From Penicillus capitatus (taxonomy: Eukaryota > Plantae > Chlorophyta): DNA of 64,000 bases. The notes beneath the pieces were generated by a model. The model worked only from the letters and a program-made list of their open reading frames with translations, did not search any database and was not told where the DNA came from. The stretch is taken from NCBI GenBank assembly GCA_965649825.1, contig OZ287706.1, positions 806,001-870,000 of the forward strand, written 5' to 3'. The position numbers and the translations under genes are program-made. Positions 7,101 through 51,340 of the stretch are shown piece after piece (within the stretch, counting starts at the first letter, position 1; every line of letters begins with the position of its first letter).

Positions 7101-10100
7101 AAACGCGAGCGCAACAGACAAACACGGGGAAACACCATTGCACAAAGCGGCCAAAAGAGGAGAGACTACAGTCGTGACGGTATGTCTTGCACCTTTCGAT
7201 CGAGATCGATACAAGGAATGAGATTCCGGACAGGCACTGATCGAAAACGGGGCAGGTGTCTCTGTCGCTAATTTTCAAGGGAAAACGGCGTTGCATCTCG
7301 CCTCTTTCAAAGGAAAGAGTGCGACAGTTAAGGTGCGAGCTTGTCATGTCTCTTCCTTTCGGCGTCTTTGTCAGCGTCGTTGTCAAGGTTCTTCTGGATT
7401 GCGGCGTCGATGTCAATGCCGTCGATAACTATGGAAACGTGCCTTTGCACGATGCGGCATGGCAAGGTCATCTGCACGTCGTCGAGGTATGTCCTGTCCT
7501 GTCCTGTCCGATCTCTTTCCTAACGATCAAACGGGTAGATCCTTCTTTCTCAAGGAGCATCCGTCGATGCCAATGCGATCGATGGCGAGACGCCACTTCA
7601 AAGGGCGGCTTATGGCCGGTACATCAATATCTTGCAGGTAAACGACAGGTCGTCCTCGTTCATGAAAGCAGCCTTCAAAGCTGCTTAGACTCTCTTGGCG
7701 CATGGAGCAGATGTCAATCATGTCAAACAGAATGGATGGACAGTGCTTCATCATGCAGCACGGTACGGCTACACAGAGATCGCTACGGTGAGCTGCCTCT
7801 CACGTTTCTCTGTTATCCTTCTGCCGTATCATTTTTTAGCTTCTCATGGAACACGGAGCAGATCTAGACATTCGCTTGAGCGATGGATCAACTCCGCTTT
7901 ACCTGGCAACTTTCTTTAATTTCACAGAGATTGCTATGGTGAACCAACCATCTCATATCTATTCTTCGATAAGATGTATGGCATCATTTCACAGAGACTC
8001 ATCGATCTCGGGGCAAACGTCAATGTTGCGTCGAATACAGGACGGACATCACTGTTGGTGGCTACTTATGCCGGACATGTAGAACTCGCCAAGGTCGATT
8101 GTACATTGAGTTTGAGACCGCCCTGGAATTCGTGCTGTTTCAGGCGCTGATGGATCACGGAGCAAATGTTAACCATGTCGACAACGACGGATGGGCTCCT
8201 CTTCTTTCTGCCGCGCGCTATGGCCGAACAGAAATCGCCATGGCGAATTCTTCATCTATTCCGAGTTTCTGTCTGACATCGTATCGTTGCCTAGGCTCTC
8301 ATCGACCACAACGCAGATGTCGACGCTGTTCATAAGGAAGGATGGACGTCACTCTTGGCAGCATCCCGTTATAACCACACGGAGATCGCTATGGCAAGCT
8401 CCATATCAGTCCTGACTTATCCGATCCGTTTATATTATCATCTCAGGCTTTGCTCAATCATGGAGCGTTTGTCGATGCGATTGACAAAGAAGGATTCACT
8501 CCGCTTCATCAAGTCGCGAAACTCGGCCACCCAGAGATGGCTACGGTGAACTCCGATCCTCGGCAACAGTCCATTAATTCGTACTGTTCCATAGGCTCTC
8601 ATCGATCGTGGTGCAGATGTCAATGCCGCCAACAAGAATGGAAGCACTCCGCTTCTTCTAGCCGTGGGACTCGGTGACGCGCAGACCGTTATGGTATATT
8701 TCAGATATGCTCCACTGTTAACAAGCTCTGTAACTCCACAGGTTCTCATGAATCATGGGGCAAATGTGGATGCTGTTGACAACGATGGGTACACCCCACT
8801 TCTTCTAGCAGCTCGCTACAATAATACAAACATTGCAGTGGTAAGTCTACACAAGGTCTGAGTGTTTAAAATGCCAATATCCTTCTTTAGATTCTCATCG
8901 ACCATGATGCAGATGTCGACGCTGTTCATAAGGAAGGATGGACGGCACTTTTGGCGGCATCCAACCTGAACAACACAAAGATGGCAATCGTGGGCTCCAT
9001 ATCCGTTCTTGCTTCTCTGACGGCTGCTTGCAGGCTCTCATGAATCATGGGGCAAATGTGGATGCTGTTGACGACAATGGGTACACTCCACTTCTTTTGG
9101 CAGTGGGAAGAAGTCACACAGCAATTGCTCTGGTCCCGTTAAAATGCCTCGTACACATCCTATAATTTATCTCTTCCATAGGCACTGATCGGTCACGGAG
9201 CGAATGTCAATGTTGCTGATAAGAATGGAAGCACTCCACTTCTCCTAGCGACGGGACTCGGTTATACGCAGATCTCTACGGTATATCGCAGATTCGCTCC
9301 ACTGTTCACAAGCTCTGTACCTCCACAGGCTCTCATCGACAATGGGGCGAATGTAAATGTCGTCGACAACAATGGATACACTCCACTTCTTTTAGCAGTG
9401 GGACTGAATCACATACCAATCGCTATGGTGAATGACAGACACAGCTTCTGCACATGTACGTGGTTATCGATACCGCTTGCTCCCTTAGGCTCTCATGGAT
9501 CACGGAGCGAATGTCAATGACGTCGATAGAGATGGATTGGCATTGCTCCTTTTGGCGGTGGGAAGGAGTCACACAGCAATCGCACTGGTCCGTTTGCATG
9601 CTCCCGTACACGCACGTCCTATTGTTTATCTGTTCTATAGGCACTGATCGATCACGAGGCAAATGTTAATGTTGTTGACAACAATGGGTACACTCCACTT
9701 CTTTTGGCAGTGGGAAGCAGTCAGACAGCAATTGCTCTGGTCCCGTTTAAATGCCTCGTACAGATCCTATAATTTATCTTTTCCGTAGGCACTGATCGGT
9801 CACGGGGCGAACGTCAATGTTGCTGATAAGAATGGGTACACTCCACTTCTTTTGGCAGTGGGAAGCAGTCAGGCAGCAATCGCACTGGTCCGTCTGAACG
9901 ATTCATACACATTCTGTTGTTCACTCATTCCACAGGCTCTCATCGATCATGGGGCAACTGTCAATGACGTCGATAGAGATGGATACACTCCGCTCCTTCT
10001 GGCAGTAGAATTTGGCCTCACGACAGTCGCTGCAGTAGACACCGATTCTCCACATTTTTTCTATCATTCTCGGTGTTCGTAGGCTCTGATCGATCATGGA

Positions 10101-10514
10101 GCGTATGTTGAGGTTGTTGACAACTACGGATACACACCCCTCTTTCTAGCAACACACCTCGGACATATAAAGATTGCGCGAGTAGACCCCATTTTTGATC
10201 CGCGCTGCCTTGATTTCACATGGCTATTCAGGCACTCATTCACCATGGAGCAGACGTCAACCGCGCCGGCAATGATGGATGGACTCCGCTTCACGTTGCA
10301 TCGTACAACGGCCGTCTAATCATTGCAAAGGTAAGTGAGTTGTCTCCTGTGCGTGAAAAGTTACTCTTTGTCTCAGGATCTAATTGCTGCGGGTGCGGCG
10401 ATCGCACGCCGGACGGTGTATGGACAAATCCCTCGAGATTTTGTTTGCGCTGCACCTGATCGTGATTGCTCAGATGACACTCGAACATCTCTCATCCAGT
10501 TATTGACTCCATGA
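4150..10514 (+). CDS. Signal peptide + trypsin-like (S1) serine protease, probably fused to a long ankyrin-repeat array
   Basis: Hydrophobic leader; RIA|GG activation site; TAAHC, GSDIGLVRL and GDSGGP triad motifs; WGL and CAG motifs; then about 29 ankyrin exons ending ..SLIQLLTP* at 10514. The in-frame link at 5410-5680 needs short introns and is inferred. Confidence 0.75.
5903..10330 (+). repeat. Array of about 29 ankyrin-repeat exons, each 99 nt (one is 102 nt), phase 0, separated mostly by about 50-nt introns
   Basis: Each exon reads xLxxxGAxVNxxDxxGxTPLxxAxxxGxxxIAx between an AG and a GT/GC; period about 150 nt (e.g. exons at 6485, 6633, 6779, 7081, 7234 ... 10084, 10232). Confidence 0.9.
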
Positions 10515-11337
10515 ACACCTTCTGTGCTGTTCCAGGACGAAGTGTCACTTCGTGCTGTACCTGTTCGAAAGATCTTGCTGATTAACGCTCGGTGGCCGTT
10601 GGTGGCCGTTGGTGTCCGTATTCAAGACATCATTTCCTCGGACGAATAGGAACACGGTTTCATCGATCTGACAATGGCTCGGTTATCTGGGTCTTATTCG
10701 CACGCTCTAATCGTCGCGATGCATAATCTCTGTCTCATCAGGGACTTGCTTATCTGGATATTGTCTGAGCGTCTCGAAGATCGCATGACGATTTCATTTG
10801 TCTCCGACTTGGACACGAAAGGTGAGTATAAACGTCTGCTTATCTCCGATCATCGTCCTGACGCGTGTGGAATGAAATTTGTGACCGGTAAGCTTTCTCC
10901 CCATCATCGTTTTGTTAAAACAGCTGGAATACCCTAGCGAACATCGTTCAATACGTAAAGGAGCGTTCTAGATCGTAGCGATCGGGGAATCCATCAGATC
11001 CAATCATGCGATCGACATAACAAGTTCCAAGTAAGATCACCGACAGTTGATGATAAGGCAATGGCTTCTTCTTCTGGGATTTGCGTCGACGATTTCGTGT
11101 ATTTATCAAAAGCGTTACTTCTAATCGAATGATCTCTACTGAACTGCCATGGTTCAAAGCTCCGGTCGTTCTTCGCGATCCTTTATCTAAAAAGATGCGG
11201 CAATCGGAAGATCGAATCATTGTTCGATTGCGCGAAAACCGCATCTGTGACGAAAGATATCGATCGTCGATCATGATAATCGCACAGCCGCTTCGCTAAG
11301 AGAATGTTATCTTTTCATTGCATAACCTGTTCGTTTA

Positions 11338-14304
11338 TCACATAAAGACATCTAGATCTAATTCGTAGTTAAACTTCTGACGGATGTCGTCTTGAATCGA
11401 TCGGACAAACTCTCGACAGCAGGTACCAAAGGAAACAGGATATCGATCGCCGACTCTGCGAATCGCTTTCAGCGTTAAGCTCGCGATTCCCATCTGCATC
11501 TCATCAACGCCGTCAATCCATTCCTTCACTCGACAGAGCATGTCCGACGCAGAATCTGTCTTCCCTTTTACGCGTTCAGGCGGCCATTTCAGAACTTCGT
11601 CCCTTTCTTTGAGCCATGCGACCAGCTTGGCGGCGACGAAAGATGGAATTCGCGATTCACACCCGCGGCAGATTAGTTCTTCGATCGATGCGACATCTAC
11701 AAGCGCTCGGACTCACGGAGATCGGCATCCCTCAGGTGACGCGACTTGAAATGACAGGATGCTTCTTGCTCTCCGCCGCCTCCGTCACCGTCTTCTGTCT
11801 CTTCGTGTCCCGCGTGTCGTTACCCGCCACAAAGAGATTGTTACGTTCCAGTGGGATCGTCTCAATGATCTCCCGTCTCAACTCGACCGGCAAAGCTTCC
11901 AGCACACTCTCATCCACCTACTCAAATCACGCACGATAAGAACGACGTCGGGACAAGACGTCAGACATCGGCCAGGACAAGACCATCTGGTTGAACGACT
12001 CTGACGGAGCGCAGAACGATCGGAGCATGCGATCTGCTGCCCTTCGACTTTGCTTTCCGTTTCTTTCCACGATCGATCGGAACGGCGGATTGAGGTCGGA
12101 GATCCGACTTCGTGCCCTGGTCGACGGGCTTGAGCTCAGGCAACAATCTCTGCGATGCATCTCTTTCGCTGTCGAGTTTCGAAATCTGACAACGGCACAG
12201 AAAATCGAGTCCATCGTTGCCCCCTGTGAACACAGCTCACCCCAATGCCGAGACCTCGAATGTCAGCGACAGGAATCTCCATGCGCAGAAACAGTTGCCA
12301 GACATGCTGCAACAGAATCTCTGGACGGTCTGTGTACTGATCCAAGGTGTGACTGCGACTGTAGTGGTCACACGCTCCGCATCCCAGAAACTTTCGCGGA
12401 CACACTGGCGCGTCTTCCTGTCGTACTCGCACCTGTCACATCGCGATACATCCACAACGTTCGGTGTTTTGTCACGCACCTTCAGCGAGACGCATCGTCC
12501 TTTGAGACGCAGAAAAGACATTCGGTGCAGCACTTCGGCCAGAATCTCCTGTAGATAGCTCCGCACATCTTCGACCCTGTGGATTCGGATACCCCAGTTG
12601 CATTCGGCGCAAACGGACTTACGCGTCTGCCAGGAACCCCACGTCGCGTGAGCCGATCCTGCCGCCACGACTTCACACCTTCGGCAGTTGGACGGCCGCT
12701 GCGTCAATCCCATGTGATGCTCTCCACATCATCCTTCCTGTCTTTTCGCCGAACGCATCGATCAGCCACTTCTCGGATCTCTCCATCACCTGCGCCGTCG
12801 TTTCGATTCCTTCTGCTCGGAGCTTCTCTGTCAGCGACCATCCGATGCCTAGGTGCTCGATCATCGACAGGCGAATCACGCGATGTGACAGCAATGCCTG
12901 GAATGTCGTGAAGGGGGACTTCGCAGAGGAAGGCCGAAATCTCGGCGCTCAGAACGCGATACTGCCCGTCGGGTTTGGCCTTGGACGTCGCCATCTTGGC
13001 CAGGAGCTTGTTCGGTCCAATTCCGGCACTGGCTGGGCACCGCGTCGTGTCGTAGATCTCGCATCGGATGCGCCGTGCCAACTCTTCAGGGTCTCCCAGT
13101 CCCGTCACATCAAGGTACGCTTCGTCACACGATACTGGCTCGACACGCGCACTGTAACTCGACAGAATTCCGTACACCTAACAGACGTCCGTTCGGTCGC
13201 ACTGTCGAACGGAACGCGCTCTGAGTGCCTGTTCTGAAATTTCGTGATACTGCTGGAACTGATAGGGGACGACTTTCAGTGCCGGGCACTTCTCCAGGGC
13301 AGACGAGATGAAGGATCCAGCACGAATTCCGAATCGACGAGCCGGGTAGTTTGCACACGAGATCTCTGCTGTGCCGTTCCTGTTGCTGGAATGGCACACC
13401 ACGAAAGGAACGTCTCTCAGTTCCGGCCGCGTCAGCAAAGCCACGGACGCGAAGAAACAGTCCATGTCGATGTGCACGATCTGTCTGTCTCCTGTCAATA
13501 AGGCCGTGCAGCATTTGGTCGGGGTTTCCGAGAGGCACCTGTTTTGGCGGGTTTGGGCCCCCGGTTCCTCTGCTGTTGCAGGAAGCCTTCGATGCGCAGC
13601 TTCCAGGTGCCGATGAAATGAAGCCTCGAATGTTCAAAGTAGCTACGGATGAAAGCGCTCGGCGTCAGATCAGCATTCTTAAAATAGGCTGTCTCTTTTT
13701 CGGCATCTCCCTCCGGAGGCATGTCCACTGTCATCTCTGCTTCCTCTTGCGGATCGTCATGGCTCATTAGAAACGCATCGAGGCGTCGATCCCGGGGATC
13801 CTGGATCTGCTCGAGGGCAAAGTCCTCCACGGGCAGCACCTCTCCTGCATCGATCGACGCAGTGATCCACTCCGGCCGCACGACCGGAACCGGATTCCTG
13901 CAGCGATGCGATCCCCCCAGTCAGACAGCGTTTACGATAGAGCACGGGCACTTTTCTTTTCGGAGCTGGCGGATCTTAGCGAGTGGCAATTGACTGCAGA
14001 TGAGGTGTGTGACAGGAGGACGGTTGTCGTAGATCTCGAATCCTCCTCCATGTAAGGCCATCAGATGTCTGAGCTCCTGTTGCGATGGCACGGTGTGTCC
14101 ATTGACGAAGATCGTGATGCCGGTGAACAGCGATGTCTTTTCCTGTCCTCCTTCGAGATGGAACCGTTCCAGTTCTTCATTCCGAAACTGCCTTCGGAAC
14201 TTGGCGTTTTTGTTGTCGAAGTAGCGGGACCAACTGCCACCGTGGCCCGCAGATGGCTCGGCTTCGCGCTTGCGCGAGGGCTTTCGTACGGTATTTGCAT
14301 CCAT
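11338..14304 (-). CDS. REV1: DNA repair protein REV1 (Y-family polymerase)
   Basis: N-terminal BRCT (FTGITIFVNGHT..HLIC), IVHIDMDCFFASV, SCDEAYLDVT, ASAGIGPNKLLAKMAT, UBM-like VLEALPVELRREI and a C-terminal REV1 domain; multi-exon. Confidence 0.95.
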
Positions 14305-14629
14305 CGACAGCCAGAAGACGAAATGCTGCGACGTCGCGGAGGACAGGCCTCGGCCCGAAGGTCAATGCAGTTGATTTCGTTGAGGTTTGTCTCAAAAACC
14401 TGTTGCATGTACCGATCCTGTCTCGTCTTTTGGATCTAACGGATCATCTGACTGCCATTTCCTAAACGTCGCCTCTCTGGGTATTTCTCCATCGGCCAAT
14501 CCATCAAACGTATACAATCAATCATGAATACGTGGCCCTTGTGAAGGGACCCTTCGTTCCGATACGCCATTGGCAGTCCACAAACGCCGTTGCTTGACGC
14601 GATTGATCCCAAAGAGGCAAGGAGCCGCC

Positions 14630-14637
14630 TATATATA
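14630..14637 (+). promoter_or_regulatory. Candidate TATA box upstream of lectin gene 1
   Basis: TATATATA about 45-50 nt upstream of the ATG at 14682. Confidence 0.35.
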
Positions 14638-14681
14638 CGTCGTTCGTTAACTGCTCTTCTGAGGACCTGTGGTTTCTAGCC

Positions 14682-15947
14682 ATGCGTACCAACCTCATTT
14701 GCAGCCCGTGTCTGGCGTGTGTCTGCGCCGTTCTGTTCTTTGCAGTTGTATCGTTCGGTTACACGGAACATGAGGCAGTCACACGGAACGACCTCCTCCT
14801 CGCCAAGGCTTTGAAAAACGGAGAATTCTGCTGTCCTTGCGTTTTGGAGAAAGCCGAGGTGGATCGTCGAACCACTCGCGAAAACTGCTGCCCCTGCGCT
14901 CTTGAACAACGTCTGAAGAAGATTCCGCTCGCACCTCTTCATCGTGCCCGTGCCGTGTACAGCAACGAGGCGAAAGACCCGGCAGTGAAGTCCTGCGAAC
15001 TCATCACCGGCGATCTTCTCTCGTCTCTGCCGAACTGCGTTTCTTTCAAAAGAGGACAAGTGGACTGCTTCTACGTCAACTATGAAACGCAGACGGTCAT
15101 CCACAAGACGATAAAGGACGGTACACCGCAGGAATCAGTCGATAATCAAGCAAAAGTACGCGATGAAGTGATTCCTGTGGCCAAGTCTAGCAACAAATTC
15201 ACCCTCATGACCTTGAACCAGTCGAACCATTTGATGACCAGAATGATCAGAGGCGGTGAATGGACGGAATGGGAGACGATCGAGAATGCCATGGCACTGG
15301 AAGTGCCGTCTGTCTTTATGCGTGGCAGCGGAGGTGTTACCTGCTTCTACCGATCAGTAGACAATTCGCTTTGGTATGTGGACCGTTCGCGCTATGGCAA
15401 ATGGGAACCACCAAAGAAGCTCCAGCTGGAGGGTTTGGTATCACCTCCGACATGCACCGAACGCGGGGATGGCGATGCCGAAGACTGTTTCGCCTTGGCA
15501 TCCGACAACTCTGTGTCGCATGAGATGTGGGTTTTCGGGGGAGAATGGAAAGTACAGCCGGGAGCGGGTGGAATGGGAAAACAGCGCATCTCTGTGACAA
15601 GCTGGGACTACGATCGTGCCGACATCTTCGTCCTTGGCGTCGGCAATCAGCTCATGCACCGAGCCTTTGTGGAAGAGGAGTGGGAGGAATGGGAGGATCT
15701 CGGCGGCAGCTTCGTGTCTGCTCCGGAATGCATTGCAATCGAAGACGAGGCGATACACTGTTTTCTGATCGGTGTCGATCGTACTCTCATGCGCAAGTCG
15801 TTCGTCGACAATTCTTGGTCGGACTGGTTCTCCTCTTCCTATGCCATGATCGAAAAGCCATCATGCGTGGTGACAGGAGGAACGACAATTGCGTGTTACT
15901 CACGCGGATACACCGGACACATGGTCGAGATCGTTTACGAACTCTAA
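14682..15947 (+). CDS. Secreted PLL/DUF346-like beta-propeller (lectin-like) protein, copy 1, intronless
   Basis: 421-aa ORF with signal peptide, two CCPC motifs and blade repeats such as ISVTSWDYDRADIFVLGVGNQLMHR..WEEWEDLGGSFVSAP. Confidence 0.75.
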   Translation: MRTNLICSPCLACVCAVLFFAVVSFGYTEHEAVTRNDLLLAKALKNGEFCCPCVLEKAEVDRRTTRENCCPCALEQRLKKIPLAPLHRARAVYSNEAKDPAVKSCELITGDLLSSLPNCVSFKRGQVDCFYVNYETQTVIHKTIKDGTPQESVDNQAKVRDEVIPVAKSSNKFTLMTLNQSNHLMTRMIRGGEWTEWETIENAMALEVPSVFMRGSGGVTCFYRSVDNSLWYVDRSRYGKWEPPKKLQLEGLVSPPTCTERGDGDAEDCFALASDNSVSHEMWVFGGEWKVQPGAGGMGKQRISVTSWDYDRADIFVLGVGNQLMHRAFVEEEWEEWEDLGGSFVSAPECIAIEDEAIHCFLIGVDRTLMRKSFVDNSWSDWFSSSYAMIEKPSCVVTGGTTIACYSRGYTGHMVEIVYEL

Positions 15948-16076
15948 GTTTTCGATCCATTACGTGCGCGTTTTGTTTTTTTGATTAAGAGATGGGTTTA
16001 TAAGCACTTTGCTGTGCGGGTGTTTGCGGGTGATGTTGTTTGAACAGACGCAAGTCTTTCAAATCGATTCAAGTGT

Positions 16077-17358
16077 TTACAGACGTTCTATCCAGTCCCA
16101 GATCTCTTCGGCCAGTCGCTGTAGATCGCGCGATCGCATGATCTCTGGGAGGATGTCTTGACGGAGAAAAGAGACGGGCTCCCCTCCCAGCATCTCTCCG
16201 TTTCGTCCCTGCAGTAGATCCATGCAGATCTTTCGGAGCTTCGTCTCCTCGTCCTTGGTGACGGAATGGCATCGTGTGGCACGAGAGGTCAGGAAACGGA
16301 CGTAAGCCAACGTCCACTTGCGATAGTCTGTTGGGAACTTCAGCTCGATCGCGTTCATGATTCCCTGTTCCAGATGATGCTTCACATCTGCCTGACTGGC
16401 ATGCAAGGATAATGCATCGAGTTCAATATCGCTCGTCTCATCTAGTCGACAAACAAATCGTTCGCTGTCTTTGAGAATGATCACTGTGATGGCTTACCTG
16501 TATCCATCTGCGCTGCTTGATGACCGGTCTGTCTCTGTGATGGATCTGAAATGAGGGTCCATGCTTCGAGGGAAGTATTGTAGAGATAAGCATGCCCGTC
16601 CGAAAGCATGGCAATTGGCAAGGAGTTGGAGCTGAAGTGGATGGTTGACACTGCACACACAACCACCTTCATTCGGTGAAGGATGATGCTAAGAAAAGAC
16701 CGCACGTTGGGCTTCCTTGCAGAGCGAGCAGACAGAGGCGCGATAGATCGACGGCCTCTTTGAACGGCTCCGAGATCTGTTGGATGCACATCCAGTCCGA
16801 GGTCCGCCAAATGAAGACTCGTTTGGCATCGGCCTGACTCGCGAGGAACTGACCGAGTGGATCCCATGCCACGCCCTTGACCATATTCTTGTGGCCGGTA
16901 ATGATGTGACAGGTCTCTCCCCCTTCGACATCCCAGATGATGATCGCCCCGTCCAGACTGCAACTGGCGAGCATATGTCGACGTGTGGTGGTGCCCCATG
17001 CGACTTCCGAGACGTCGAGCTTCTGCTGATGCCACTTGCGAAATGGGCGCCACGAAGGTTCGTTGAAAGGCACCCATGCGGCAACACTGACAACGCCGTC
17101 CGACCCTCCCGAGGCCAAGAGACGGCCAGTGTGATTGAATCGAACGGAGTTCACAGGCTTCTCGTGAACTTTGATCTCGGCGAGCAGCGAAGTGTCGTTG
17201 GAAGAGGAGAGCGCTTTGGCGAAGCTCCAGACGTTAACGACGCCATCGTCACCGCCGGTCGCAAATGCATTTCCGCGGGGCGAGATATCGATAGAGAAGA
17301 TCGGAACGACGTTTTCCTTCTCCAAGTGCACCGCCCATGTCAACGGCTTAGTAATCAT
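16077..17358 (-). CDS. HIRA: HIRA-like histone chaperone, internally shortened
   Basis: N-terminus PIFSIDISPRGNAFATGGDD, HEKPVNSVRF, VKGVAWDPLGQFLASQADAK; C-terminal Hira-domain motifs LSDGHAYLYN..W, HLEQ..A..LKFPTDYRKWTLAYVRFL, LRKICMDLL. Total span is only about 1.3 kb. Confidence 0.8.
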
Positions 17359-18553
17359 TCTTGTAGCAGATTGACGTAACGCGCACGACAACCAGGAGAG
17401 AATGGAAACGCCGACGAACGCAGACTACTACACGAACTGGGAAGGCAAAGGTGAAGAGCTGCTAGCTGTCTCGCTGAGGTGAGAAGGCGTCGTGCAGGAT
17501 TGGTGAAGCCGGCGCCGCCTCCGGAAGTGCGAGACTGGCCGCAACCCGTCGGACTGACACCGCACGAAGAATACATGATTCATCCTTCGGTCAACAAAGT
17601 CTCCCTGGGGCTCGGCTGGGACGAGTGAGCGCGTGTGATGCCGAATGTTCGAGAGGGATACCGGGTTTCGCTGTAGAGGAGTGGATGTGGATGCCTCTGC
17701 AGCCCTCATTGGTTCCCAGCACGACGTGGTGGACCTCGTCTGGTGGCACAATCTCAAGAGCACATGCAAAAGTGTCAAGCATTCGGGCGATGACACGACA
17801 GGCGAAGGGGGTGGCGATGATGAGATCATCACAGTCGACATAACAGACATTCCGTTGAGGGTGCACCACATCCTCTTCGCCGTCTGCATCTACAGTGACG
17901 GATTCTCCTTCGATCAAGTCCGTCTGCAGCGTCCTATGTGTCCTCTGCACGTCCTTTTCTCTGTGTAGCTGCGCAGAGCGTATGTGAGAATGATGCACGG
18001 GAAGCCAAAGTACAAGGGACACATCATGTGCCAGTTTGAGCTGAACCAGCTGGTCGGTCGAGCGATGTTGATGGGAGTGATGACGAGGAAAGGTGCTTAC
18101 TGGAGCTTCAAGGCACTCGGTATTCCTGCTACGGGCCAGACCATCCAGGACGTCGTACAGGTAAGTGTCTCATTCCTTGTACCTACACGACGGCACCGCC
18201 ATATGTGTTTTTCAGAATCCTGCAAACTTGGAGTTCCTGCAGTCGAGCATCTCCTTTCCGCCACTGCTAAGGAACGTGAGTGTCCGTGTGACGCAGGGGG
18301 CAGAGTTGGCTGCAAAGGATGCCGCCAGATTCGGAAGAGAGGCATCATCTGACCCTTACTTCACTCTGAAGTTTAAGAAGAGTGTTGGTTTTCTGCAGTG
18401 CTATTCGACGATGGGGCAGATTTGGCGCTGAAAAACAGGCCAAAATCGTCAGCGCAGCAGCGGGGTTACGCTATTAGTTGTTAGCAACGCAAAGCGACTT
18501 GATCGACACTGTGAAGAACTCCCTCTAGTTACACCACCCTCCACGTCTCTTTC

Positions 18554-18622
18554 GCCTCGTGGTGTAGCGGTTGGCACACTTGGGGATTTCCCAAGAGGCG
18601 TGGGTTCGAATCCCATCGAGGT
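18554..18622 (+). other. tRNA-like head of the SINE (not a functional tRNA)
   Basis: Cloverleaf folds: GCCTCG/CGAGGT acceptor, GTG/CAC D stem, CTTGG/CCAAG anticodon stem, GTGGG-TTCGAAT-CCCAT T arm. The anticodon loop GGATTTC lacks U33 and purine 37. Confidence 0.75.
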
Positions 18623-18925
18623 CCCGTGCGTCACTCGGGTGATAGTGACAGGTCGGAGGGTTAATCGGCATCTCGCCGCGACGTAATTGGACAAATGCTC
18701 GGAGATTGAAATCTAGACCCCTAGCCGCGGGTTGGAGGGTCACGTCTGGGGAGGTCGACGACGCAAGACTGTCGAGAACGAGACGCCGGAAGACGAGCGA
18801 TTTAATGAACGATGGATGGGTGATAGATGAAAATCGATGAACACTTGAACGGTTAACTAGCGGTGAATGTCGGGTTGTAAAATGCCTCTTGCGAATGCGA
18901 CTGTAAACAAACCACGATTGACACA
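18555..18925 (+). mobile_element. tRNA-derived SINE nested in the solo LTR
   Basis: 13-bp TSD CACGTCTCTTTCG (18542-18554 and 18926-18938); tRNA-like head with A box TGGTGTAGCGGTTGG and B box GGTTCGAATCC; short CA tail; empty site in the related LTR near 52.0 kb. Confidence 0.85.
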
Positions 18926-20385
18926 CACGTCTCTTTCGACCTCTTCGGCATGGACGACCCGTATCTCTCTTTCGCCGCCTTAGTCGGGGAGTGGAAGACT
19001 AAAGTCGCCGGAGTCTTGGCCGGGAGATGGAGGGGCGTCGTGGCTAGATTCATCTTCGTGTTGGCTCATCTCACCAAGCGCAGCGGAAGTCTTGAAGTCA
19101 GATAATGATGGGAAAGAGCTTGGAGGCCGCACCGACAATTTTGCAGAAAGGAGACGACTTGTTACAATCGATGATAGATAGCAAATGTTTGTAAGACAGA
19201 AACGGGGTTTATGCGATGTCCAAAAGATAACAGAAACTCAGGTGTCAAACGAGAGATGATTTATGTGTCCAGACCCTTGCTTAAATACCCAGTCCCTGAA
19301 GTGACGATAGGAAAAACAGATGAACTTCAAGAGTGAGTTCACAATGAGATTCACAATCAGACTAGGAAGTTCAGCATGAAATTCTAGAAGCTTCCCAAGA
19401 ACTTCGCAGGAACTCGCTCCTAGTCAGCATGACTTGTCCGCGACTCAGCGGCGACGGCTCCGTTGCGCAGCCAAGAACGCGAAAAGGCATAAACGACAGA
19501 AGATGCAATCCATTATGTTGTCGTCTCATCACGTTCCCTCAGAATTGCGCCCTTTCTTCACAGACACAATTGGCCCGTAACACCGGAAACTTTAAACCCA
19601 AACTTGCTCCCAAAGTTTTTACTTTGTATGCCTATGTACTATGTTCTTCTTGCGTTTTTTCTTAGTTACGCACACAAGATTCATGTTTTCTGTCGCTTCT
19701 TGGCGACATCTTGATTTCATGCCGTCGCCTTATTGCGCCGCCACATCTTTAGGCTTCTACCACACGCTGCGTCTTCTTCTCAGCGCGTTGACTGTCATTT
19801 CATCACGTCAACTGACTGCCACGGGTTTCTCGTTATTAATGTAATCCAGACTGATCATTCAGGGTTACAGCACTCCTCGTCGCCTCAGACTTCTGGCTCA
19901 AAACTCGACGTCGCCTGCACCTCGCAGGTCATTTGCTGCTCCAAACTCGATGTCGCCGCGAACTTAGCAGCTATCGAATTCCGCCAGCTTCTGAGATTTC
20001 TGGCCAGCGGCTAAGTACCCGCAGATGATAGTGACGTTTTTCCTAGCATTCTGACAATGCACGTCATCCAGACTCGAACCCTGGATATCTGCTCGATCAC
20101 GAGTTCCGCGTCCTACTGCAGACCCGTCTCTCACCCTGCTTTGGTCACTTCGTGACCCTCTCCAGCGCTCTCTTAACCGTCGCTGAATACTTTTTCGTCC
20201 TTTAAGCAATCGGTCTTGACGGCCTTCGAACCGTCGCCAAAAACTTCTTCGCCTGATTACTTAGCGCACCAACAAAGAGAACATTCAAATCAAACTTCGT
20301 CAAGAGGTCGCTGAATCCGACGTGGAATGAAACTGCTTTTAATTTGGGACGCATAAGCGAATCGGAACCGAAGGCTTTGAAGATT

Positions 20386-22061
20386 ATAAAGTAGGTCTTT
20401 CTTACAGCCCTTTTTAATGTTAAACATCAAAGGCGCATCTGTTCTGTATAATGCCGACGATCAGCAGGGCAGCAGATCAGCGTTGGCCAAGCAGGAAAGG
20501 ATGGAAGATGTGAACCTCTGGTGCTATAGACAAACCGATTACTCTCTACTTGTTATCCGGTGTTTCCGCGAGGCGCACTCGTGAAACGAACAAATGGGCG
20601 TATCGGGAGGACCATGTAATCCAGAATCGCGTACGGAGTCTTGCACTCTTCATGAAGCTTCTCGTAGAGTGTCTTCGAGATGAAGACTTTCAGGTTTTTG
20701 CTTGGTAGCCATTCGGGGAGAGGCTGTCCTGCGAGATCTCGTTTCCTGCGATTCAGTCGGTGTGGGGCCGCGAGGTGCGACTCTTGGAGATCGGTAACTG
20801 AGAGGTTCCATCGGCTGCATTTTGTGTTGCGATGGCTTCGATGGTATCTTCAGGGTCAATATCTGTGTCGACGCTGCCGATGACTATCGGGATCTTGTCT
20901 TTGGTGGGCGAGACGTACGGATTGTTGACTGTGAACGTCCCGATATCGTCCAGCTCCAGATCCCATCTGGCACCGGCGCATTCCAGGCAGCGATCAAGGA
21001 CCTGCTCAAATTTCTGGATCAGTTGTGCCCTAATCTGCACGTAGTATCTTCCGCCGTGGTCTGTCCGGATGTCTTCGACGTATTCCTTTAAGTTCTGGAT
21101 CTTTAGCGTTTGTTCCAGGCTGATGCCAAGCTGGCGAAAGGACGGGCGCTCTCCTTTCAGGGTTACTGGGCAGAGCTGGAAGCTGCGTTCGTCACAGCGA
21201 ATTTCGGCCTTGATTGCGTTGGTTTGCTCCCGGATCTCTCGTGCCTGGGTGGTTCGTTGACGCTGGGCGAGGGTCGTGATCTGGGGCTGCTCTGAGGGCA
21301 GGGACTGACGGGCAGCGTCGCGGTACGAGCGGTTGACTTCTCGAACGGTGTCGGCCGCAGAAGGTGGTGTCACGTGGGCCATTGGAGCTGGGGGTGTTGT
21401 AGCGAACGAGACCATGGACTTGTGAAATCCAAGACAGGTTCCTATCTCCTCAAGACGAGTGGCGATTCCCAGGAGCGTTTCTCGGTTTTCGGGTGGAACG
21501 GATCCAGTGGCGCATGCCAGATGAGCCTGCGTAGTGGCGAGGTCTTGGGCGAGTGCTTCCAGGAGATCTGAAGGGGTAACTTTTTCCTTGTATCGGCAGA
21601 TCTGTGAGAGACAGGAAGACTTAGCGTGCGGATCATAGGTGGGACCTTCTGGGGCAAGTAGGAGCGAGTCTCTAGCGCTCTCGTGGTGTCGGACGAGTCG
21701 GAGCTGCACGGCATCTCGCCTTTCATGGGCTGCCAGGTAGGCTCGGATTCTCAGGATGAGCTGTGCGGCGTCCATGGAAGCAGCGTCCTGTGTGGAACAC
21801 GCCCGGACTGCGGTGTTCACGAGTATGAGCTCAGCCTTGCTCATGTTTTCCAGAACCTCTGGCGCGACCGGCGCAGGTCGCGCCGGTATCGGACCGTGTT
21901 TGCGGCCTGAGCAACCGCCGTGCGCACTGGGTCCGAGGCGGTGTTAGGACCGCTAGACTGAGAGCCTGACGGTTGCATCGTTCGTTTTCGCGTTAGCGGG
22001 CACCGTCGTTCAGCAAGGGTTTTTAAAACAGCGGAACGAAAGTGTCGACGAGAGAATTTTT
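20386..22061 (-). mobile_element. ORF1-only non-LTR-derived element (1.68 kb)
   Basis: 15-bp TSD AAGGCTTTGAAGATT at 20371-20385 and 22062-22076; contains a single gag/ORF1-like ORF; no RT, no poly-A, no TIRs. Confidence 0.75.
20753..21844 (-). CDS. LINE ORF1/gag-like protein, frameshifted near 20810
   Basis: Intronless 363-aa ORF with IPIVIGSVDTDIDPEDTIEAI; continues in another frame as RWNLSV..RLNRRK..ILDYMVLPIRPFV, resembling pre-zinc-knuckle ORF1 segments. Confidence 0.55.
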   Translation of the reverse strand: MSKAELILVNTAVRACSTQDAASMDAAQLILRIRAYLAAHERRDAVQLRLVRHHESARDSLLLAPEGPTYDPHAKSSCLSQICRYKEKVTPSDLLEALAQDLATTQAHLACATGSVPPENRETLLGIATRLEEIGTCLGFHKSMVSFATTPPAPMAHVTPPSAADTVREVNRSYRDAARQSLPSEQPQITTLAQRQRTTQAREIREQTNAIKAEIRCDERSFQLCPVTLKGERPSFRQLGISLEQTLKIQNLKEYVEDIRTDHGGRYYVQIRAQLIQKFEQVLDRCLECAGARWDLELDDIGTFTVNNPYVSPTKDKIPIVIGSVDTDIDPEDTIEAIATQNAADGTSQLPISKSRTSRPHTD

Positions 22062-22405
22062 AAGGCTTTGAAGATTGAAGTGTACGATCGCGATCCTATC
22101 TCGAGGGACGATTTCATGGGAGCCGTTCGGATTCCTGCAAGTGCCCTGTGCAACACCGGCCCAGGAACACACTATTTTTGGTTTGATTTGGGTCCTGGAA
22201 AGAAAGAAGATCGACAGACCACCGTCTCGGGGAGGATTCTGGTGTCCGTGACGGCAGAGGATTCATGAATTCTGTCGTGCGACACCACATTCGTCCGTCG
22301 ACTCCCCACGCAAACGACACTCATTAAAGTCTTTTATTTTCTGCTTTTACGGGCGATCGACGTCTGTGCTCATGGTCATTGTCGTAACGAATAGATATTT
22401 TGTGA

Positions 22406-24672
<2,267 letters not shown>

Positions 24673-25009
24673 TAGGGGCGATTCCTGGGGAACCAAATCC
24701 CATCGACCACGATGGCATTGCCCAAGGGATACCATGGCATCTGTCCGATAATTCAAGAGGGACGTTAGCAAAACAATACCGGGATGTCTGCAAACACGCG
24801 AGAGGTGTCTGTCTCCTGTCCTTGCTCGCCCTTTGCGAAGTTCTGGAGCTGCGGACCTTATTCATGAAAAGTTCCTCGAGATCCTGGCACAGAACATTCT
24901 CGATAACGGATAGCGACGGTTGGGCACGCGCCGTCAGCATAAAAGGCGGCGGCACATGCAATGCGCAGCCTTTTTGTTTTCTTGCACGCGTTTTGTCGCC
25001 AGCGCAAAA

Positions 25010-26945
25010 ATGATGTGGCGTCCGACAGAGCAATGGGCCGTTCCTGCGTTGCTCGCCCTTCTTCTCTTTGTTACGCACCTGTCCCACGTCGACGGCACGA
25101 CGTGTTCGACTGAGGGCTCTCTCGTCGACTGCGGTAAACGACTGCTTGTCTACCGCCGTGGCTCAGAGCGCATCCAGGACACTATGGAATCACAAAGGAA
25201 GAATGTGAAGGGAAACAACAGTGCTGCTGGAATTCCAACGTTCCTCCGGGTTCTCCATGGTGTTTCTATCCAAACGAAGAATACAAGTACTGCTCGGATA
25301 CGGCAGAGCGTTCGGACTGCGGTAGACCGTTGATGCACTTGGTCTGTGGTGAGACGATGTTGCCTCTCAGGACACTTTGGAATTACCGAAAAGGAATGCG
25401 TCGACCGCGAATGCTGCTGGAACGAGAAGCCGGGCGAACCCTATTGCTTTTTCTACAATACGAACATGGACCCGCGACGCTGTCCAACGGATGAGTCTCG
25501 CGAAGATTGCGGTGCGTTTGGTTTTTCGTGACGGCGGTGATGTAGCCGTTCTTCATTGTGCTGTAGGTTACACCGGTATCCAGCAAGATGAGTGCACGAG
25601 AAGAGGATGCTGTTGGTCTCCGCTTTCTGACGGGTCCAAAAAACCGTGGTGCTTTTTCAAGAATTATGGGAAGAGTGACTACGACGCATGCTGCCCAGCA
25701 AGTTATCGGATGGACTGCGGTAAGACGCAGGAGTCTGCCACGGGTCTTTGACATGTTCTCTGTGCCGAACAGGCTATGGGGGCATTGACGAAAGGGAGTG
25801 CCTGGGAAGAGGCTGCTGTTGGGATCTGAACCAGAAGTCGGGTGTTCCGTGGTGCTACCACAAGAACTGCAAAAATCCTTCTCTGGAGAAGTGTTCGGCA
25901 AAGCTCCCGCGCATAGAGTGTGGCAATTACATGACACAGCAGTCGGAGTGCACGAGAAGAGGATGCTGTTGGTCTCCGCTTTCTGACGGGTCCAAAAAAC
26001 CGTGGTGCTTTTTCAAGAATTATGGGAAGAGTGACTACGACGCATGCTGCCCAGCAAGTTATCGGATGGACTGCGGTAAGACGCAGGAGTCTGCCACGGG
26101 TCTTTGACATGTTCTCTGTGCCGAACAGGCTATGGGGGCATTGACGAAAGGGAGTGCCTGGGAAGAGGCTGCTGTTGGGATCTGAACCAGAAGTCGGGTG
26201 TTCCGTGGTGCTACCACAAGAACTGCAAAAATCCTTCTCTGGAGAAGTGTTCGGCAAAGCTCCCGCGCATAGAGTGTGGCAATTACATGACACAGCAGTC
26301 GGAGTGCACGAGAAGAGGATGCTGTTGGTCTCCGCTTTCTGACGGGTCCAAAAAACCGTGGTGCTTTTTCAAGAATTATGGGAAGAGTGACTACGACGCA
26401 TGCTGCCCAGCAAGTTATCGGATGGACTGCGGTAAGACGCAGGAGTCTGCCACGGGTCTTTGACATGTTCTCTGTGCCGAACAGGCTATGGGGGCATTGA
26501 CGAAAGGGAGTGCCTGGGAAGAGGCTGCTGTTGGGATCTGAACCAGAAGTCGGGTGTTCCGTGGTGCTACCACAAGAACTGCAAAAATCCTTCTCTGGAG
26601 AAGTGTTCGGCAAAGCTCCCGCGCATAGAGTGTGGCAATTACATGACACAGCAGTCGGAGTGCACGAGAAGAGGATGCTGTTGGTCTCCGCTTTCTGACG
26701 GGTCCAAAAAACCGTGGTGCTTTTTCAAGAACAGTGATGACTGTGGACACGTCGAGTCGAAGGAGAAGCCAGAGCCATCTCCGTACGAGAAGGCTAAGAT
26801 CGAGGAGAAGCCAGAGCCATCTCCGTACGAGAAGGCTAAGATCGAGGAGAAGCCAGAGCCATCTCCGTACGAGAAGGCTAAGATCGAGGAGAAGCCAGAG
26901 CCATCCCCTTATGAGACGACTGCGACAGTGGGACCAATAGAATAA
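25010..26945 (+). CDS. Secreted multi-trefoil (P-type) domain protein, copy 1 (about 9 trefoil domains)
   Basis: Signal peptide; repeated CG|YxGIxxxECxxRGCCWxPxxxxxPWCF motifs, with introns often falling in DCG|; ends after EEKPEPSPYEKAKI repeats at TAA 26943-26945. Confidence 0.85.
25590..26731 (+). repeat. Tandem duplication, 356-bp unit x about 3.2, including the intron
   Basis: Identical ORFs recur at 25748, 26104 and 26460 (period 356); each unit holds two trefoil domains plus one intron. Confidence 0.95.
26760..26915 (+). repeat. 42-bp coding repeat (EEKPEPSPYEKAKI) x about 3.7
   Basis: gaggagaagccagagccatctccgtacgagaaggctaagatc repeated. Confidence 0.9.
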
Positions 26946-27660
26946 GTGGAACGCGGACAGCCACAGGATGACGTTGTGGGTGGAGATTACGTCGAGGAGC
27001 TCCTAGAAGAATATAGACTTGCGGTGCCCTCAAAGACGTCAGCTGACGCGTTCGATTCCGCAGACGAGGATGCGGTGTTTATTCCTGTAAGTAGCACGGA
27101 ATCATCCGTCCATCATCATATTGGAGGAGGACAGGCAAAGTCGGGTAAAAAAGAAGAGACAAGAGAATCGGTTGGAGGTGCAAGTGCAGTGATCGTCGAC
27201 GAGGAAGACGATATTCTGGATGAAGTCGTGTCGTCCGCTACTGCCAAGAAGACAGAAACGATGAAAGAGTACGCTGTAATGGCACATGGAGATGAAACAG
27301 CAAAACGACGTGGACGTCATTCCGGAGGCGTCACGAAGAAGGTTGGCTCAGAGAAATGCTTGGGATGCGAGAGCAAAGAAAAAGCAAAAGAATCCCTGGA
27401 AGAGCAATTCGTTGTGAATCCAAAGAGTCGGTGACGTCTTCGGAGACTGAAATTCATGAAGTCGAGGTTCCTTCGGCGAAAAAAGATGAAACTTCTTGCG
27501 GTGAAGATTACTGTAAGTATATGAGGGTAGCACGAAGATGACGAAAGAGGAGAGTTTTGGTTCGCAAAAAAACTGAAAGTGAGAAGGAAGCCGAATCTGT
27601 CTCTGGCGAATCCGGTGCTGACGCTAAACTTGAAACGGAGTCCGAGACGACGAAGACGAC
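26946..27660 (+). pseudogene. Decayed acidic mucin-like tail of trefoil gene 1
   Basis: Near-identical to the reverse complement of about 63090-63800, but follows an in-frame TAA, has frameshifting indels near 27414 and 27520, and homology stops abruptly at about 27660. Confidence 0.8.
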
Positions 27661-49448: not shown

Positions 49449-49949
49449 TTACTCATTCGTGTTATTCCAAATGCTCTTCTCGCTGACACCGGGATTTGTT
49501 AGCTCATACATAGGACCCTTCTCATGCATTCCGAGTCTGGTGTACGCCTCCTTAGCCGCCTTATTGCCATGATCCACGTAGAGCTTCAATGCAATGGCGC
49601 CTCGGCTTTTGGCCATCTCCCGAACATGACGAAACAACATCGTGTAGTAGCCATTTCTACGGTGTTCCGGTCTGACATAGACGCTCTGTATCCACCAAGC
49701 AGAGGCGTTGCGTTGAGGGACCCACTCTTGGTTGACCATGAGCTGTCCGACGATTTCCAGATTCTTCACAGCGACAAAGTACGTGCTGCCCAACGACGGA
49801 TTTATCAACGCATTTCGAACGCCGTTCGACGCTATATCGGGATCCAAAACGAGTGACTCCGTTTCTACTGCCATCGCAAGGTTGTGTTCTGCGATGATTG
49901 GCGCATCGTCTAGAACACCCTCGCGAACGTAAACATCTTCGACTGACAT
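49449..49949 (-). CDS. GNAT family N-acetyltransferase, copy 1, intronless
   Basis: VGQLMVNQEW..WWIQSVYVRPEHRRNGYY..LKLYVDHGN..AY..LGM. Confidence 0.9.
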   Translation of the reverse strand: MSVEDVYVREGVLDDAPIIAEHNLAMAVETESLVLDPDIASNGVRNALINPSLGSTYFVAVKNLEIVGQLMVNQEWVPQRNASAWWIQSVYVRPEHRRNGYYTMLFRHVREMAKSRGAIALKLYVDHGNKAAKEAYTRLGMHEKGPMYELTNPGVSEKSIWNNTNE

Positions 49950-51302: not shown

Positions 51303-51340
51303 GCCTGCGTCAGAACCTGAACGATACGAGACATAGTGTC

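What the first reader, a model, noticed from the sequence alone, without database searches (positions are those of the whole stretch)
14682..15947. Intronless, secreted, disulfide-adapted PLL/DUF346-like propeller lectin family with a CCPC-x14-19-CCPC leader
Seen: three paralogs (also 39548-40804 and 45493-46767) with no introns in an intron-dense region. The blades resemble the bacterial S-W-x3-R-x-D-x-F..G..N.L.H..W..W..LGG repeat, but several carry an added Cys pair (SCVSYKRGQVDC, TCTERGDGDAEDC, ECIAIEDEAIHC, SCVVTGGTTIAC), and a twin CC-x-C motif follows the signal peptide. Established: PLL-family lectins are bacterial 7-bladed fucose/O-methyl-sugar binders that oligomerise. Inference: a horizontally acquired lectin scaffold adapted to secretion, with Cys-rich N-termini for cross-linking or metal binding.
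Basis: partly seen in the sequence, partly recalled or inferred. Interest (0 to 1): 0.7.

Follow-up and report, generated by a model that had tools for sequence, protein, structure and literature searches.

The report
Secreted disulfide-stapled PLL-type propeller gene family
Three intron-free genes in an unidentified, intron-rich microbial eukaryote encode secreted seven-bladed propeller proteins related to the Photorhabdus PLL lectins, but their cysteine pairs also occur in bacterial relatives and most known sugar-binding residues are missing, so this is a moderately interesting variant of a known protein family.

Summary
Three intact, intronless ORFs (421, 418 and 424 aa) encode paralogs with an N-terminal hydrophobic leader, a twin CCxC motif and a seven-bladed propeller. 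Homology to the PLL/PHL lectins is real: phmmer against PDB gives E=5e-20, and the top 22 Foldseek hits to the AlphaFold model are all PLL-family structures.

- **Cys pairs are not eukaryotic additions.** One cross-strand Cys pair per blade is common in secreted DUF346 propellers of many bacterial phyla.
- **The repeat is not exclusive to bacteria.** It is already catalogued in fungi, Bigyra, Chlorophyta and some animals.
- **The acquisition is not recent.** The same genome carries at least 8 paralogs diverged to 25-30% identity. All are intronless, have host-like GC3 and are under purifying selection. A relative exists in EukProt. Any transfer from bacteria would be old, and it is unproven.
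- **Canonical sugar-binding residues are mostly lost.** About 1 of 7 hydrophobic sites and 0 of 7 polar sites are kept, so fucose binding cannot be assumed.

The twin CCxC leader is specific to this clade. Its role, as a covalent oligomerisation hinge or a metal site, is inference only. The source organism could not be named.

The parts
14682..15947 (+). Paralog A, complete intronless CDS (421 aa plus stop). Predicted signal peptide about aa 1-26, low-confidence leader aa 27-~100, seven-bladed propeller aa ~100-421.
   Evidence: ORF; hydrophobic N-terminus; phmmer to PLL2 6rfz E=5e-20; AF2 pLDDT above 85 for residues 100-421; Foldseek top hits all PLL family; dN/dS 0.22-0.34 against orthologs.
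14829..14897 (+). Twin CCxC motif of paralog A (CCPC aa 50-53, 15-residue spacer, CCPC aa 69-72).
   Evidence: Regex scan finds it only in these genes and their orthologs. It is conserved across paralogs although synonymous sites are saturated (dS 1.5-2.5). AF2 places the two motifs as short paired strands, but at pLDDT below 50.
14979..15944 (+). Propeller domain of A. N-terminal 'velcro' strand aa 102-108. Blades aa 109-156, 157-203, 204-251, 252-298, 299-343, 344-388, 389-421. Cross-strand Cys pairs C119/C129, C258/C269, C350/C360, C395/C405. Unpaired-looking C105 and C221.
   Evidence: DSSP strands, blade dissection, Cys positions.
14630..14637 (+). TATATATA box about 45-50 nt upstream of the ATG of paralog A.
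   Evidence: Read directly from the sequence. Function as a promoter element is inferred.
39548..40804 (-). Paralog B, complete intronless CDS (418 aa from the first ATG). Same architecture; twin CCPC with a 15-residue spacer.
45493..46767 (-). Paralog C, complete intronless CDS (424 aa; the true start may be the MM at aa 13-14). CCSC, 16-residue spacer, CCPC.
   Evidence: The version in the public record (P0003) differs at two residues.
9470..27658 (.). Left arm of a large inverted segmental duplication that contains paralog A with REV1, HIRA, a kinase and a trefoil mucin. The second copy (97-98.7% identical) carries A' (P0001).
   Evidence: blastn of L001 against the window; record coordinates.
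63089..64000 (.). Inner end of the right arm of the same inverted duplication. The arm continues beyond the window end to A' (P0001).
   Evidence: L001 19594-21266 equals window 64000-62328 at 100% identity, and L001 19520-20505 also matches window 26710-27658 at 88.8%.

Best explanation
These are three members (four counting the copy just outside the window) of a gene family of at least eight in one uncultured, intron-rich microbial eukaryote. Each encodes a protein with an N-terminal signal peptide, so it should enter the secretory pathway.

The body of the protein is a seven-bladed beta-propeller homologous to the Photorhabdus PLL/PHL lectins (Pfam DUF346 / Beta-prop_PLL; PropLec7A). It belongs to the subfamily whose blades are stapled by a cross-strand disulfide between strands A and B. 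That subfamily is widespread in secreted bacterial proteins, where the propeller is often fused to trypsin or M23 peptidases. That pattern fits a role as a binding or targeting module.

The most likely history is an old acquisition of such a stapled propeller from bacteria, followed by duplication and divergence inside the eukaryotic lineage. The genes stayed intronless, took on host composition and remained under purifying selection.

The most likely function is extracellular ligand binding, probably of glycans, but with altered and fewer sites than PLL/PHL. Only the pocket at blade 3 keeps both canonical tryptophans.

The window clade then gained a twin CCxC segment between signal peptide and propeller. 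I infer that it forms inter-chain disulfides that multimerise the propeller for avidity.

Shown: ORFs, paralogy, purifying selection, fold, homology, bacterial occurrence of the Cys pairs, loss of canonical residues.
Inferred: secretion, actual disulfide formation, glycan binding, hinge function, direction of transfer.
For: - **Homology and fold.** PDB phmmer finds only PLL-family chains, E 5e-20 to 2e-14. Orthologs and relatives carry a precomputed PF26607 Beta-prop_PLL hit. The AF2 model is confident over residues 100-421. Foldseek ranks 22 PLL/PHL/PLL2-5 entries first (E about 1e-17, TM 0.72-0.80), then other propeller lectins.
- **Family size and age.** P0023, P0120, P0168 and L005:15582-16931 lie on a 41x contig of the same sample as the window. 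P0022 and P0111 lie on 131-180x contigs of the sample that holds the A ortholog P0002. They are 24-32% identical to the window clade yet colinear blade for blade. EukProt member P0170 and the two tandem paralogs around P0164 add further eukaryotic copies.
- **Purifying selection.** dN/dS is 0.13-0.34.
- **Host-like composition.** GC3 is 0.585-0.614 against 0.52-0.70 in neighbouring exons.
- **Bacterial Cys-stapled relatives.**; fusions to trypsin or M23.
- **Signal peptide.** Hydrophobicity profile.
- **CCxC leader.** Conserved across saturated paralogs and unique to them.
Against: - No SignalP-type predictor, expression data or protein data were available.
C105 and C221 have no obvious partner.
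- Canonical PHL/PLL contact residues are mostly absent: the R-x-E of the polar site survives only as R-x-D in blade 5, and the LWH tryptophan survives only in blade 3. Glycan binding is therefore a weak inference.
- The leader is modelled at pLDDT below 50.
- The neighbour-joining tree that makes the eukaryote-like proteins one clade has no support values, and most comparison sequences lack taxonomy.
- The source organism was not identified. The HIRA query returned only three hits at 32-36% identity.
Confidence: 0.6

Rival explanations
1. One reading: a fairly recent bacterial-to-eukaryote transfer of a PLL fucose/O-methyl-sugar lectin, which then acquired disulfides as an adaptation to the eukaryotic secretory pathway.
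For: The genes are intronless in an intron-rich genome. The family is overwhelmingly represented by bacterial-looking proteins: 5342 hits at 50% clustering, and all named ones are bacterial.
Against: Cys pairs occur at the same strand positions in many bacterial phyla. The genome holds at least 8 paralogs diverged to 24-32% identity. GC3 matches the host. The next-best hit outside the eukaryote-like clade scores 165 bits against at least 329 bits within it, so no close bacterial donor exists. The fucose-site residues are not conserved.
Confidence: 0.1
2. The propeller is no longer a lectin. It is a disulfide-stabilised extracellular scaffold that binds proteins or other non-sugar ligands, for example as a partner or regulator of secreted proteases or as a cell-surface or matrix component.
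For: Most canonical sugar-contact residues are lost in all paralogs. There are recurrent fusions with trypsin, including the eukaryote-like P0039. A secreted trypsin and trefoil mucin-like genes sit in the same window. The PLL3 paper reports that hydrophobic pockets of PLL lectins can hold peptide termini (PMC6943638).
Against: The WxxW strand-D tryptophan pairs, which line the inter-blade pockets in PLL/PHL, are kept in blades 2, 5 and 6, and blade 3 keeps a full Trp pair. All structurally closest proteins are lectins.
Confidence: 0.25
3. The twin CCxC segment is a metal site (for example a Cu(I) or Zn thiolate cluster, as in the CCxC motif of the copper chaperone Cox17) rather than an inter-chain disulfide hinge.
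For: Six clustered, strictly conserved cysteines sit in a short, otherwise variable segment. The resemblance to CCxC copper motifs comes from my own background knowledge and was not tested here.
Against: The segment follows a signal peptide, so it would pass through the oxidising ER, where clustered thiols normally form disulfides (inference). No His, Met or other metal-ligand context is conserved.
Confidence: 0.12
4. The family is ancestrally eukaryotic in this lineage, or moved between eukaryotes, and is not the product of bacterial transfer. The similarity to bacterial stapled propellers reflects ancient common descent or transfer in the opposite direction.
For: Deep within-genome divergence, monophyly of the eukaryote-like proteins in the NJ tree, and no close bacterial relative. 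DUF346 is recorded in several eukaryotic groups.
Against: The eukaryotic distribution in the literature is patchy. Bacterial diversity and abundance of the repeat is far larger. All copies are intronless in a genome that otherwise splits genes densely.
Confidence: 0.15

Closest known systems
PLL family lectins of Photorhabdus (PLL, PLL2-5, PHL): PropLec7A, Pfam DUF346 PF03984 / Beta-prop_PLL PF26607, InterPro IPR007132
   Same: Seven-bladed propeller built from W-motif repeats of about 46 residues. Significant sequence homology (E=5e-20) and best structural match. WxxW..LGG strand-D motif and R-x-D/E-x-F strand B.
   Different: About 20% identity. Intra-blade Cys pairs are absent from PLL/PHL. 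Most fucose-site (Thr, two Trp) and polar-site (Arg, Glu, Gln, Trp) residues are replaced. The window proteins add a eukaryotic signal peptide and a 70-residue leader with twin CCxC. PLL/PHL oligomerise through single surface Cys residues (PMC12203525), not an N-terminal hinge.
Uncharacterised bacterial Cys-stapled DUF346 propellers (for example Povalibacter HKE93938.1, M23 peptidase fusion; Alteromonadaceae TVZ41865.1; Anaerolineales MDM8528209.1, trypsin fusion)
   Same: One Cys pair per blade at the same strand A / strand B positions (xPxC-V-x8-11-D-C-F), with N-terminal signal peptides.
   Different: Blades are near-identical repeats that keep R, T, Y/W and WW residues. The propeller is usually fused to a hydrolase or other domain. 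There is no CCxC leader. The eukaryotic proteins have seven individually diverged blades, with blade 5 always Cys-free.
Other propeller lectins: CV39L/BP39L (PropLec7C), AAL/AFL/AofleA (PropLec6A), tectonins (PropLec6B)
   Same: Beta-propeller lectin architecture with inter-blade sites. Weaker Foldseek matches, E 1e-10 to 1e-8.
   Different: No detectable sequence homology in the PDB phmmer search. Different blade number or motif.
N-terminal Cys-rich oligomerisation segments of collectins and ficolins, and immunoglobulin hinges (analogy only, from my own background knowledge)
   Same: A short Cys cluster placed N-terminal to a carbohydrate-recognition domain. In those proteins it makes inter-chain disulfides that raise avidity.
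   Different: No sequence relationship and no collagen or coiled-coil stalk. The analogy was not tested here.

Membership tests
PLL-type propeller (Pfam DUF346 / Beta-prop_PLL; PropLec7A) | Significant sequence similarity to family members or models | tested here: met
   phmmer against PDB: PLL2 E=5e-20, PLL3, PLL4, PLL5, PHL and PLL all hit, and nothing else. Orthologs carry a precomputed PF26607 hit. The older DUF346 repeat model alone is sub-threshold at 17.4 bits against 22.
PLL-type propeller (Pfam DUF346 / Beta-prop_PLL; PropLec7A) | Seven-bladed beta-propeller of four-stranded W-motifs | tested here: met
   AF2 model with 28 strands in seven blades, pLDDT above 85. Foldseek top 22 hits are PLL family, TM 0.72-0.80 normalised to target.
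PLL-type propeller (Pfam DUF346 / Beta-prop_PLL; PropLec7A) | Conserved hydrophobic (fucose / O-methyl sugar) site: Thr plus two Trp per blade | tested here: not met
   Alignment-based mapping: both Trp are kept only in blade 3 (W231, W241). Thr is replaced in all blades except Ser in blade 4 of A (site definition from PMC5584973).
PLL-type propeller (Pfam DUF346 / Beta-prop_PLL; PropLec7A) | Conserved polar (Gal/Glc) site: Arg, Glu, stacking Trp, Gln/Trp of the next blade | tested here: not met
   R-x-D occurs only in blade 5, where the stacking Trp is Ala or Val. No blade has the full set.
PLL-type propeller (Pfam DUF346 / Beta-prop_PLL; PropLec7A) | Carbohydrate binding and oligomerisation shown experimentally | not testable with these tools
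   Needs recombinant protein.
Horizontally transferred gene of bacterial origin | Eukaryotic sequences nested within a bacterial clade in a supported phylogeny | tested here: inconclusive
   The NJ tree groups all eukaryote-like proteins as one clade next to bacterial stapled propellers, without support values and with mostly unlabelled sequences. The score gap is 329 against 165 bits.
Horizontally transferred gene of bacterial origin | Patchy eukaryotic distribution against broad bacterial distribution | tested here: met
   5342 cluster representatives. Bacterial MAGs of at least six phyla or classes. The literature lists only Bigyra, Chlorophyta, Fungi and a few animal phyla.
Horizontally transferred gene of bacterial origin | Foreign composition or recent arrival | tested here: not met
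   GC and GC3 equal those of neighbouring host exons. There are deep paralog divergence and orthologs in several assemblies.
Secreted eukaryotic protein | Cleavable N-terminal signal peptide, with no transmembrane or retention signal | tested here: inconclusive
   Positive n-region and a 12-20 residue hydrophobic core in all three proteins. No dedicated predictor was available. The C-terminus ends in the last beta-strand.

The most novel reading that the evidence does not exclude
A protist has turned a bacterial disulfide-stapled PLL propeller into a collectin-like secreted recognition molecule. A twin CCxC hinge covalently multimerises the propeller. The family of at least 8 paralogs, with remodelled inter-blade pockets and a substitution-rich blade-1 loop between the two youngest copies, provides a repertoire of new ligand specificities for recognising prey, symbionts or pathogens.
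Probability: 0.2. Interest if true: 0.6.

Novelty: new variant of a known kind. Interest (0 to 1): 0.4.

Why it matters
No member of the Cys-stapled branch of the PLL/DUF346 propellers has been studied, whether bacterial or eukaryotic. All solved structures are the Cys-free Photorhabdus lectins.

This family offers three things:
- compact, probably very stable propellers with seven individually diverged blades;
- a natural test of how PLL-type pockets are remodelled;
- a candidate new oligomerisation device, the twin CCxC.

It also adds a multi-copy example to the short list of eukaryotic PLL-like proteins, and a case for studying old bacterial-to-protist gene flow. It does not overturn anything known.

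Tried and rejected
- **Naming the organism.** A HIRA exon query returned only three unnamed hits at 32-36% identity. The sample and run accessions are in no paper held. Rfam found only a tRNA. A Blastocystis idea was dropped, on my recollection that its introns are much shorter, because the introns here are 59 and 68 nt. An ascomycete idea was dropped because HIRA had no close hits and intron density is high. Identity remains unknown.
- **Scans of GTDB genomes.** The scan with the broad alignment A2 failed for lack of a conserved stretch. With A1 it found no relative. Only the bacterial query P0019 gave loci.
- **Profile search for homologs.** The search for homologous proteins with the profile recovered few relatives. 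The exhaustive representative search was the informative one.
- **Common origin of the trypsin genes.** I checked whether the window's trypsin and the trypsin of the P0039 fusion point to a transferred trypsin-propeller fusion. They are 33% identical, which is not decisive.
- **Disulfide geometry.** Cys-Cys distances could not be measured because the model file is not exposed. Pairing is inferred from the strand register.
- **C105-C221 as a fifth disulfide.** Considered unlikely: C105 lies in the velcro strand of blade 7 and C221 in strand B of blade 3.

Full report
**1. Observation**

The three ORFs are real and intact: 14682-15947(+) 421 aa, 39548-40804(-) 418 aa, and 45493-46767(-) 424 aa. 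Only one ORF in the 64-kb window is longer. The proteins are 55-58% identical to each other. Synonymous sites between paralogs are saturated (dS 1.5-2.5), while dN/dS is 0.13-0.20. Against the orthologs of A, dN/dS is 0.22-0.34. These are therefore functional genes.

Neighbouring genes are interrupted:
- The trypsin gene at about 4432-5635 has GT-AG introns of 59 and 68 nt.
- REV1, HIRA and, in a related locus, V-ATPase C appear as chains of short ORFs.

Each protein starts with a basic n-region and a hydrophobic core typical of a signal peptide.

The mature proteins share 16 conserved cysteines:
- six in a twin CCxC motif (spacer 15-16 residues; CCSC in the first motif of C);
- four blade pairs;
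- two singletons, C105 and C221.

**2. Fold and family**

A phmmer search of the PDB finds only the Photorhabdus lectins PLL2, PLL3, PLL4, PLL5, PHL and PLL (E 5e-20 to 2e-14). Orthologs and relatives carry a precomputed Pfam hit to PF26607 Beta-prop_PLL. The local, older library holds only the DUF346 repeat model, which scores below threshold.

AlphaFold2 on a 12-sequence alignment gives pLDDT above 85 for residues 100-421. The model has 28 strands in seven blades. An N-terminal strand (102-108) completes the last blade. Residues 1-92 fall below pLDDT 50. Foldseek against the PDB ranks 22 PLL-family entries first (E about 1e-17, TM 0.72-0.80, 20% identity). These are followed by CV39L/BP39L and the six-bladed fungal fucose lectins. 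The PLL-type fold is confirmed.

**3. The Cys pairs are inherited, not added**

An exhaustive profile search of 1.84 billion cluster representatives gives 5342 hits. Of the 148 hits outside the window's own clade, 46 have three or more blades with C-x(7-13)-C-[aromatic/aliphatic] at the same positions. That is 38 once the eukaryote-like proteins are excluded. A typical bacterial blade reads ...EPECVSWGxNRIDCFARGTDxAMYHRWWNGSSWGGWENLGG.

Named examples are bacterial:
- Povalibacter, an M23 peptidase fusion;
- Alteromonadaceae, annotated 'DUF346';
- Anaerolineales, a trypsin fusion.

A GTDB scan with one such protein finds relatives in Alpha-, Beta- and Gammaproteobacteria, Chitinophagaceae, Nitrospira and Chloroflexota MAGs.

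In the model, each pair lies in adjacent antiparallel strands A and B of one blade. The residue numbers sum to the same value as the hairpin partners. For example, C350+C360 equals 353+357. This is the geometry of a cross-strand staple.

**4. The eukaryotic family is larger and older than the window shows**

The window corresponds to ENA metagenome contig ERZ25074695:ctg340479_41x (954 kb).

Copies found:
- A second copy of A (P0001, 94% identical) lies about 55 kb downstream of A on that contig, just beyond the window end, in an inverted duplicate of the REV1-PLL-HIRA-kinase-trefoil segment. The arms are 97-98.7% identical at the nucleotide level.
- Another 41x contig of the same sample carries P0023, a neighbouring paralog (L005:15582-16931), P0120 and P0168.
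- In sample ERZ26696514, contigs at 131-180x carry orthologs of A, B and C, plus P0022 and P0111.

These further paralogs are only 24-32% identical to the window clade. They are nevertheless colinear blade by blade, with blade 5 always Cys-free and the same C-terminal E[KT]PSCV...C..R motif. All are single ORFs with signal-peptide-like starts, and their neighbours are split eukaryotic genes.

Other relatives:
- P0170 in EukProt;
- P0164, from a sequencing run, which has two tandem copies;
- a trypsin-propeller fusion, P0039.

None of these has the twin CCxC. The leader is therefore an innovation of the window clade.

GC and GC3 of the three genes match neighbouring exons. With a full-length propeller HMM, the family scores at least 329 bits and the best outsider 165 bits. 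No close bacterial donor is visible.

**5. Known distribution**

A 2024 review lists PropLec7A (IPR007132, the DUF346 repeat) in Archaea and Bacteria. Within Eukarya it lists Bigyra, Chlorophyta, Fungi and several animal phyla (PMC11186620). Fungal PLL homologs are discussed in PMC10481521. The statement that the family is bacterial is therefore incomplete. Eukaryotic members are catalogued but uncharacterised.

**6. Function**

The PHL and PLL papers define two kinds of site:
- a hydrophobic fucose / O-methyl-sugar site (Thr of RGTDN, Trp of LWH, first Trp of WxxW);
- a polar site (Arg and Glu of GRLEVF, Trp of IWQ, Gln/Trp of the next blade) (PMC5584973; PMC6943638).

I mapped these positions through the phmmer alignment and the family alignment:
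- the LWH tryptophan survives only in blade 3 (W231, with W241);
- the IWQ tryptophan survives only in blade 4;
- Arg-x-Asp survives only in blade 5;
- Thr is nowhere conserved.

The strand-D WxxW pairs persist in blades 2, 5 and 6. At most one canonical pocket is intact. Binding of some extracellular ligand is likely. All structural neighbours are lectins, and bacterial relatives use the propeller next to secreted hydrolases. Fucose specificity cannot be inferred, and a non-sugar ligand is a serious rival.

The two youngest copies, A and A', differ at 26 residues. Eight of these cluster in residues 143-157, a blade-1 loop. That may mark a variable contact surface; this is inference.

**7. The CCxC leader**

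Six cysteines in two CCxC motifs are conserved in an otherwise fast-evolving segment of about 70 residues. Behind a signal peptide, the simplest reading is disulfide formation. Possible arrangements are an intra-chain ladder between the two motifs (AF2 pairs them, at low confidence) or inter-chain bonds that multimerise the propeller. Multimerisation would raise avidity, as the single surface cysteines of PLL and PHL do (PMC12203525). A metal-thiolate site is the alternative. None of this could be tested here.

**8. Origin**

Evidence in favour of an old bacterial origin:
- the far larger bacterial diversity;
- the shared stapled-blade subtype;
- the recurrent trypsin fusion on both sides;
- the patchy eukaryotic record;
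- the absence of introns from every copy in an intron-dense genome.

Against a recent event: host-like composition, deep paralogy, and the lack of a close donor. The NJ tree is compatible with a single entry but has no support values, and most tips are unlabelled. The question stays open.

**9. Verdict**

The fold call is right. The story of disulfide adaptation after transfer is not supported. Lectin specificity is uncertain. The clade-specific twin CCxC leader and the size of the eukaryotic family are the new elements.

I rate this a new variant of a known kind, of moderate interest.

Noticed in passing
window 9470-27658 and 63089-64000 (continuing beyond the window; locus L001): A large inverted segmental duplication of about 18 kb with arms 97-98.7% identical, flanking a roughly 35-kb spacer that holds paralogs B and C. 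The arms differ by a 3.7-kb segment present only in the left arm (window 18382-22062) and a 1.2-kb segment present only in the right arm.
   Followed up: partly
window 25100-27000, 32554-33627, 62036-64000: Three secreted mucin-like genes with tandem Trefoil (P-type) domains. The repeat unit is about 356 bp at 25679-26731. They also carry 14-residue KPEPSPYEK(A/T)K(I/V)EE repeats. Trefoil domains are unusual outside animals (my own recollection).
   Followed up: partly
window 4432-5635 (+): A trypsin-like serine protease gene with two GT-AG introns (4768-4826 and 5149-5216). Its RFPYMCSL...TAAHC region resembles the protease half of P0039, a metagenomic trypsin-PLL-propeller fusion (33% identity).
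   Followed up: partly
window 18553-18624 (+): A single tRNA gene (Rfam 40.9 bits) lies inside the 3.7-kb segment that is missing from the other arm of the duplication.
   Followed up: no
window 35241-57721 compared with locus L008: The window is not identical to the public record of the same contig here. Identity is 98.7-99.97%, with a roughly 1-kb indel at 50306-51303 and a 237-bp indel at 42108-42345. The region around gene A is 100% identical. This looks like haplotype or strain variation, and paralog C differs from the record's copy (P0003) at two residues.
   Followed up: partly
window 49452-49988 (-) and 51344-51886 (-): Two paralogous GNAT acetyltransferase ORFs lie side by side. The indel against the public record falls between them.
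   Followed up: no
window 16672-17424 (-) (HIRA WD40 exon): A normally well-conserved HIRA exon found only three database hits, at 32-36% identity. Either the lineage is very poorly sampled or the word-indexed search has limited recall; it also missed the near-identical copy on the same contig.
   Followed up: partly
window aa 179-181 of paralog A (15216-15224) and the equivalent in B and C: The motif LNQSNHL in blade 2 is invariant in the window clade and contains an N-x-S sequon, a possible conserved N-glycosylation site.
   Followed up: no
loci L006 and L007 (11773-15360): Next to paralog P0111 lies a 1195-aa NACHT plus HEAT/PDS5-repeat protein, an NLR-like architecture, in the same unidentified eukaryote.
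   Followed up: no
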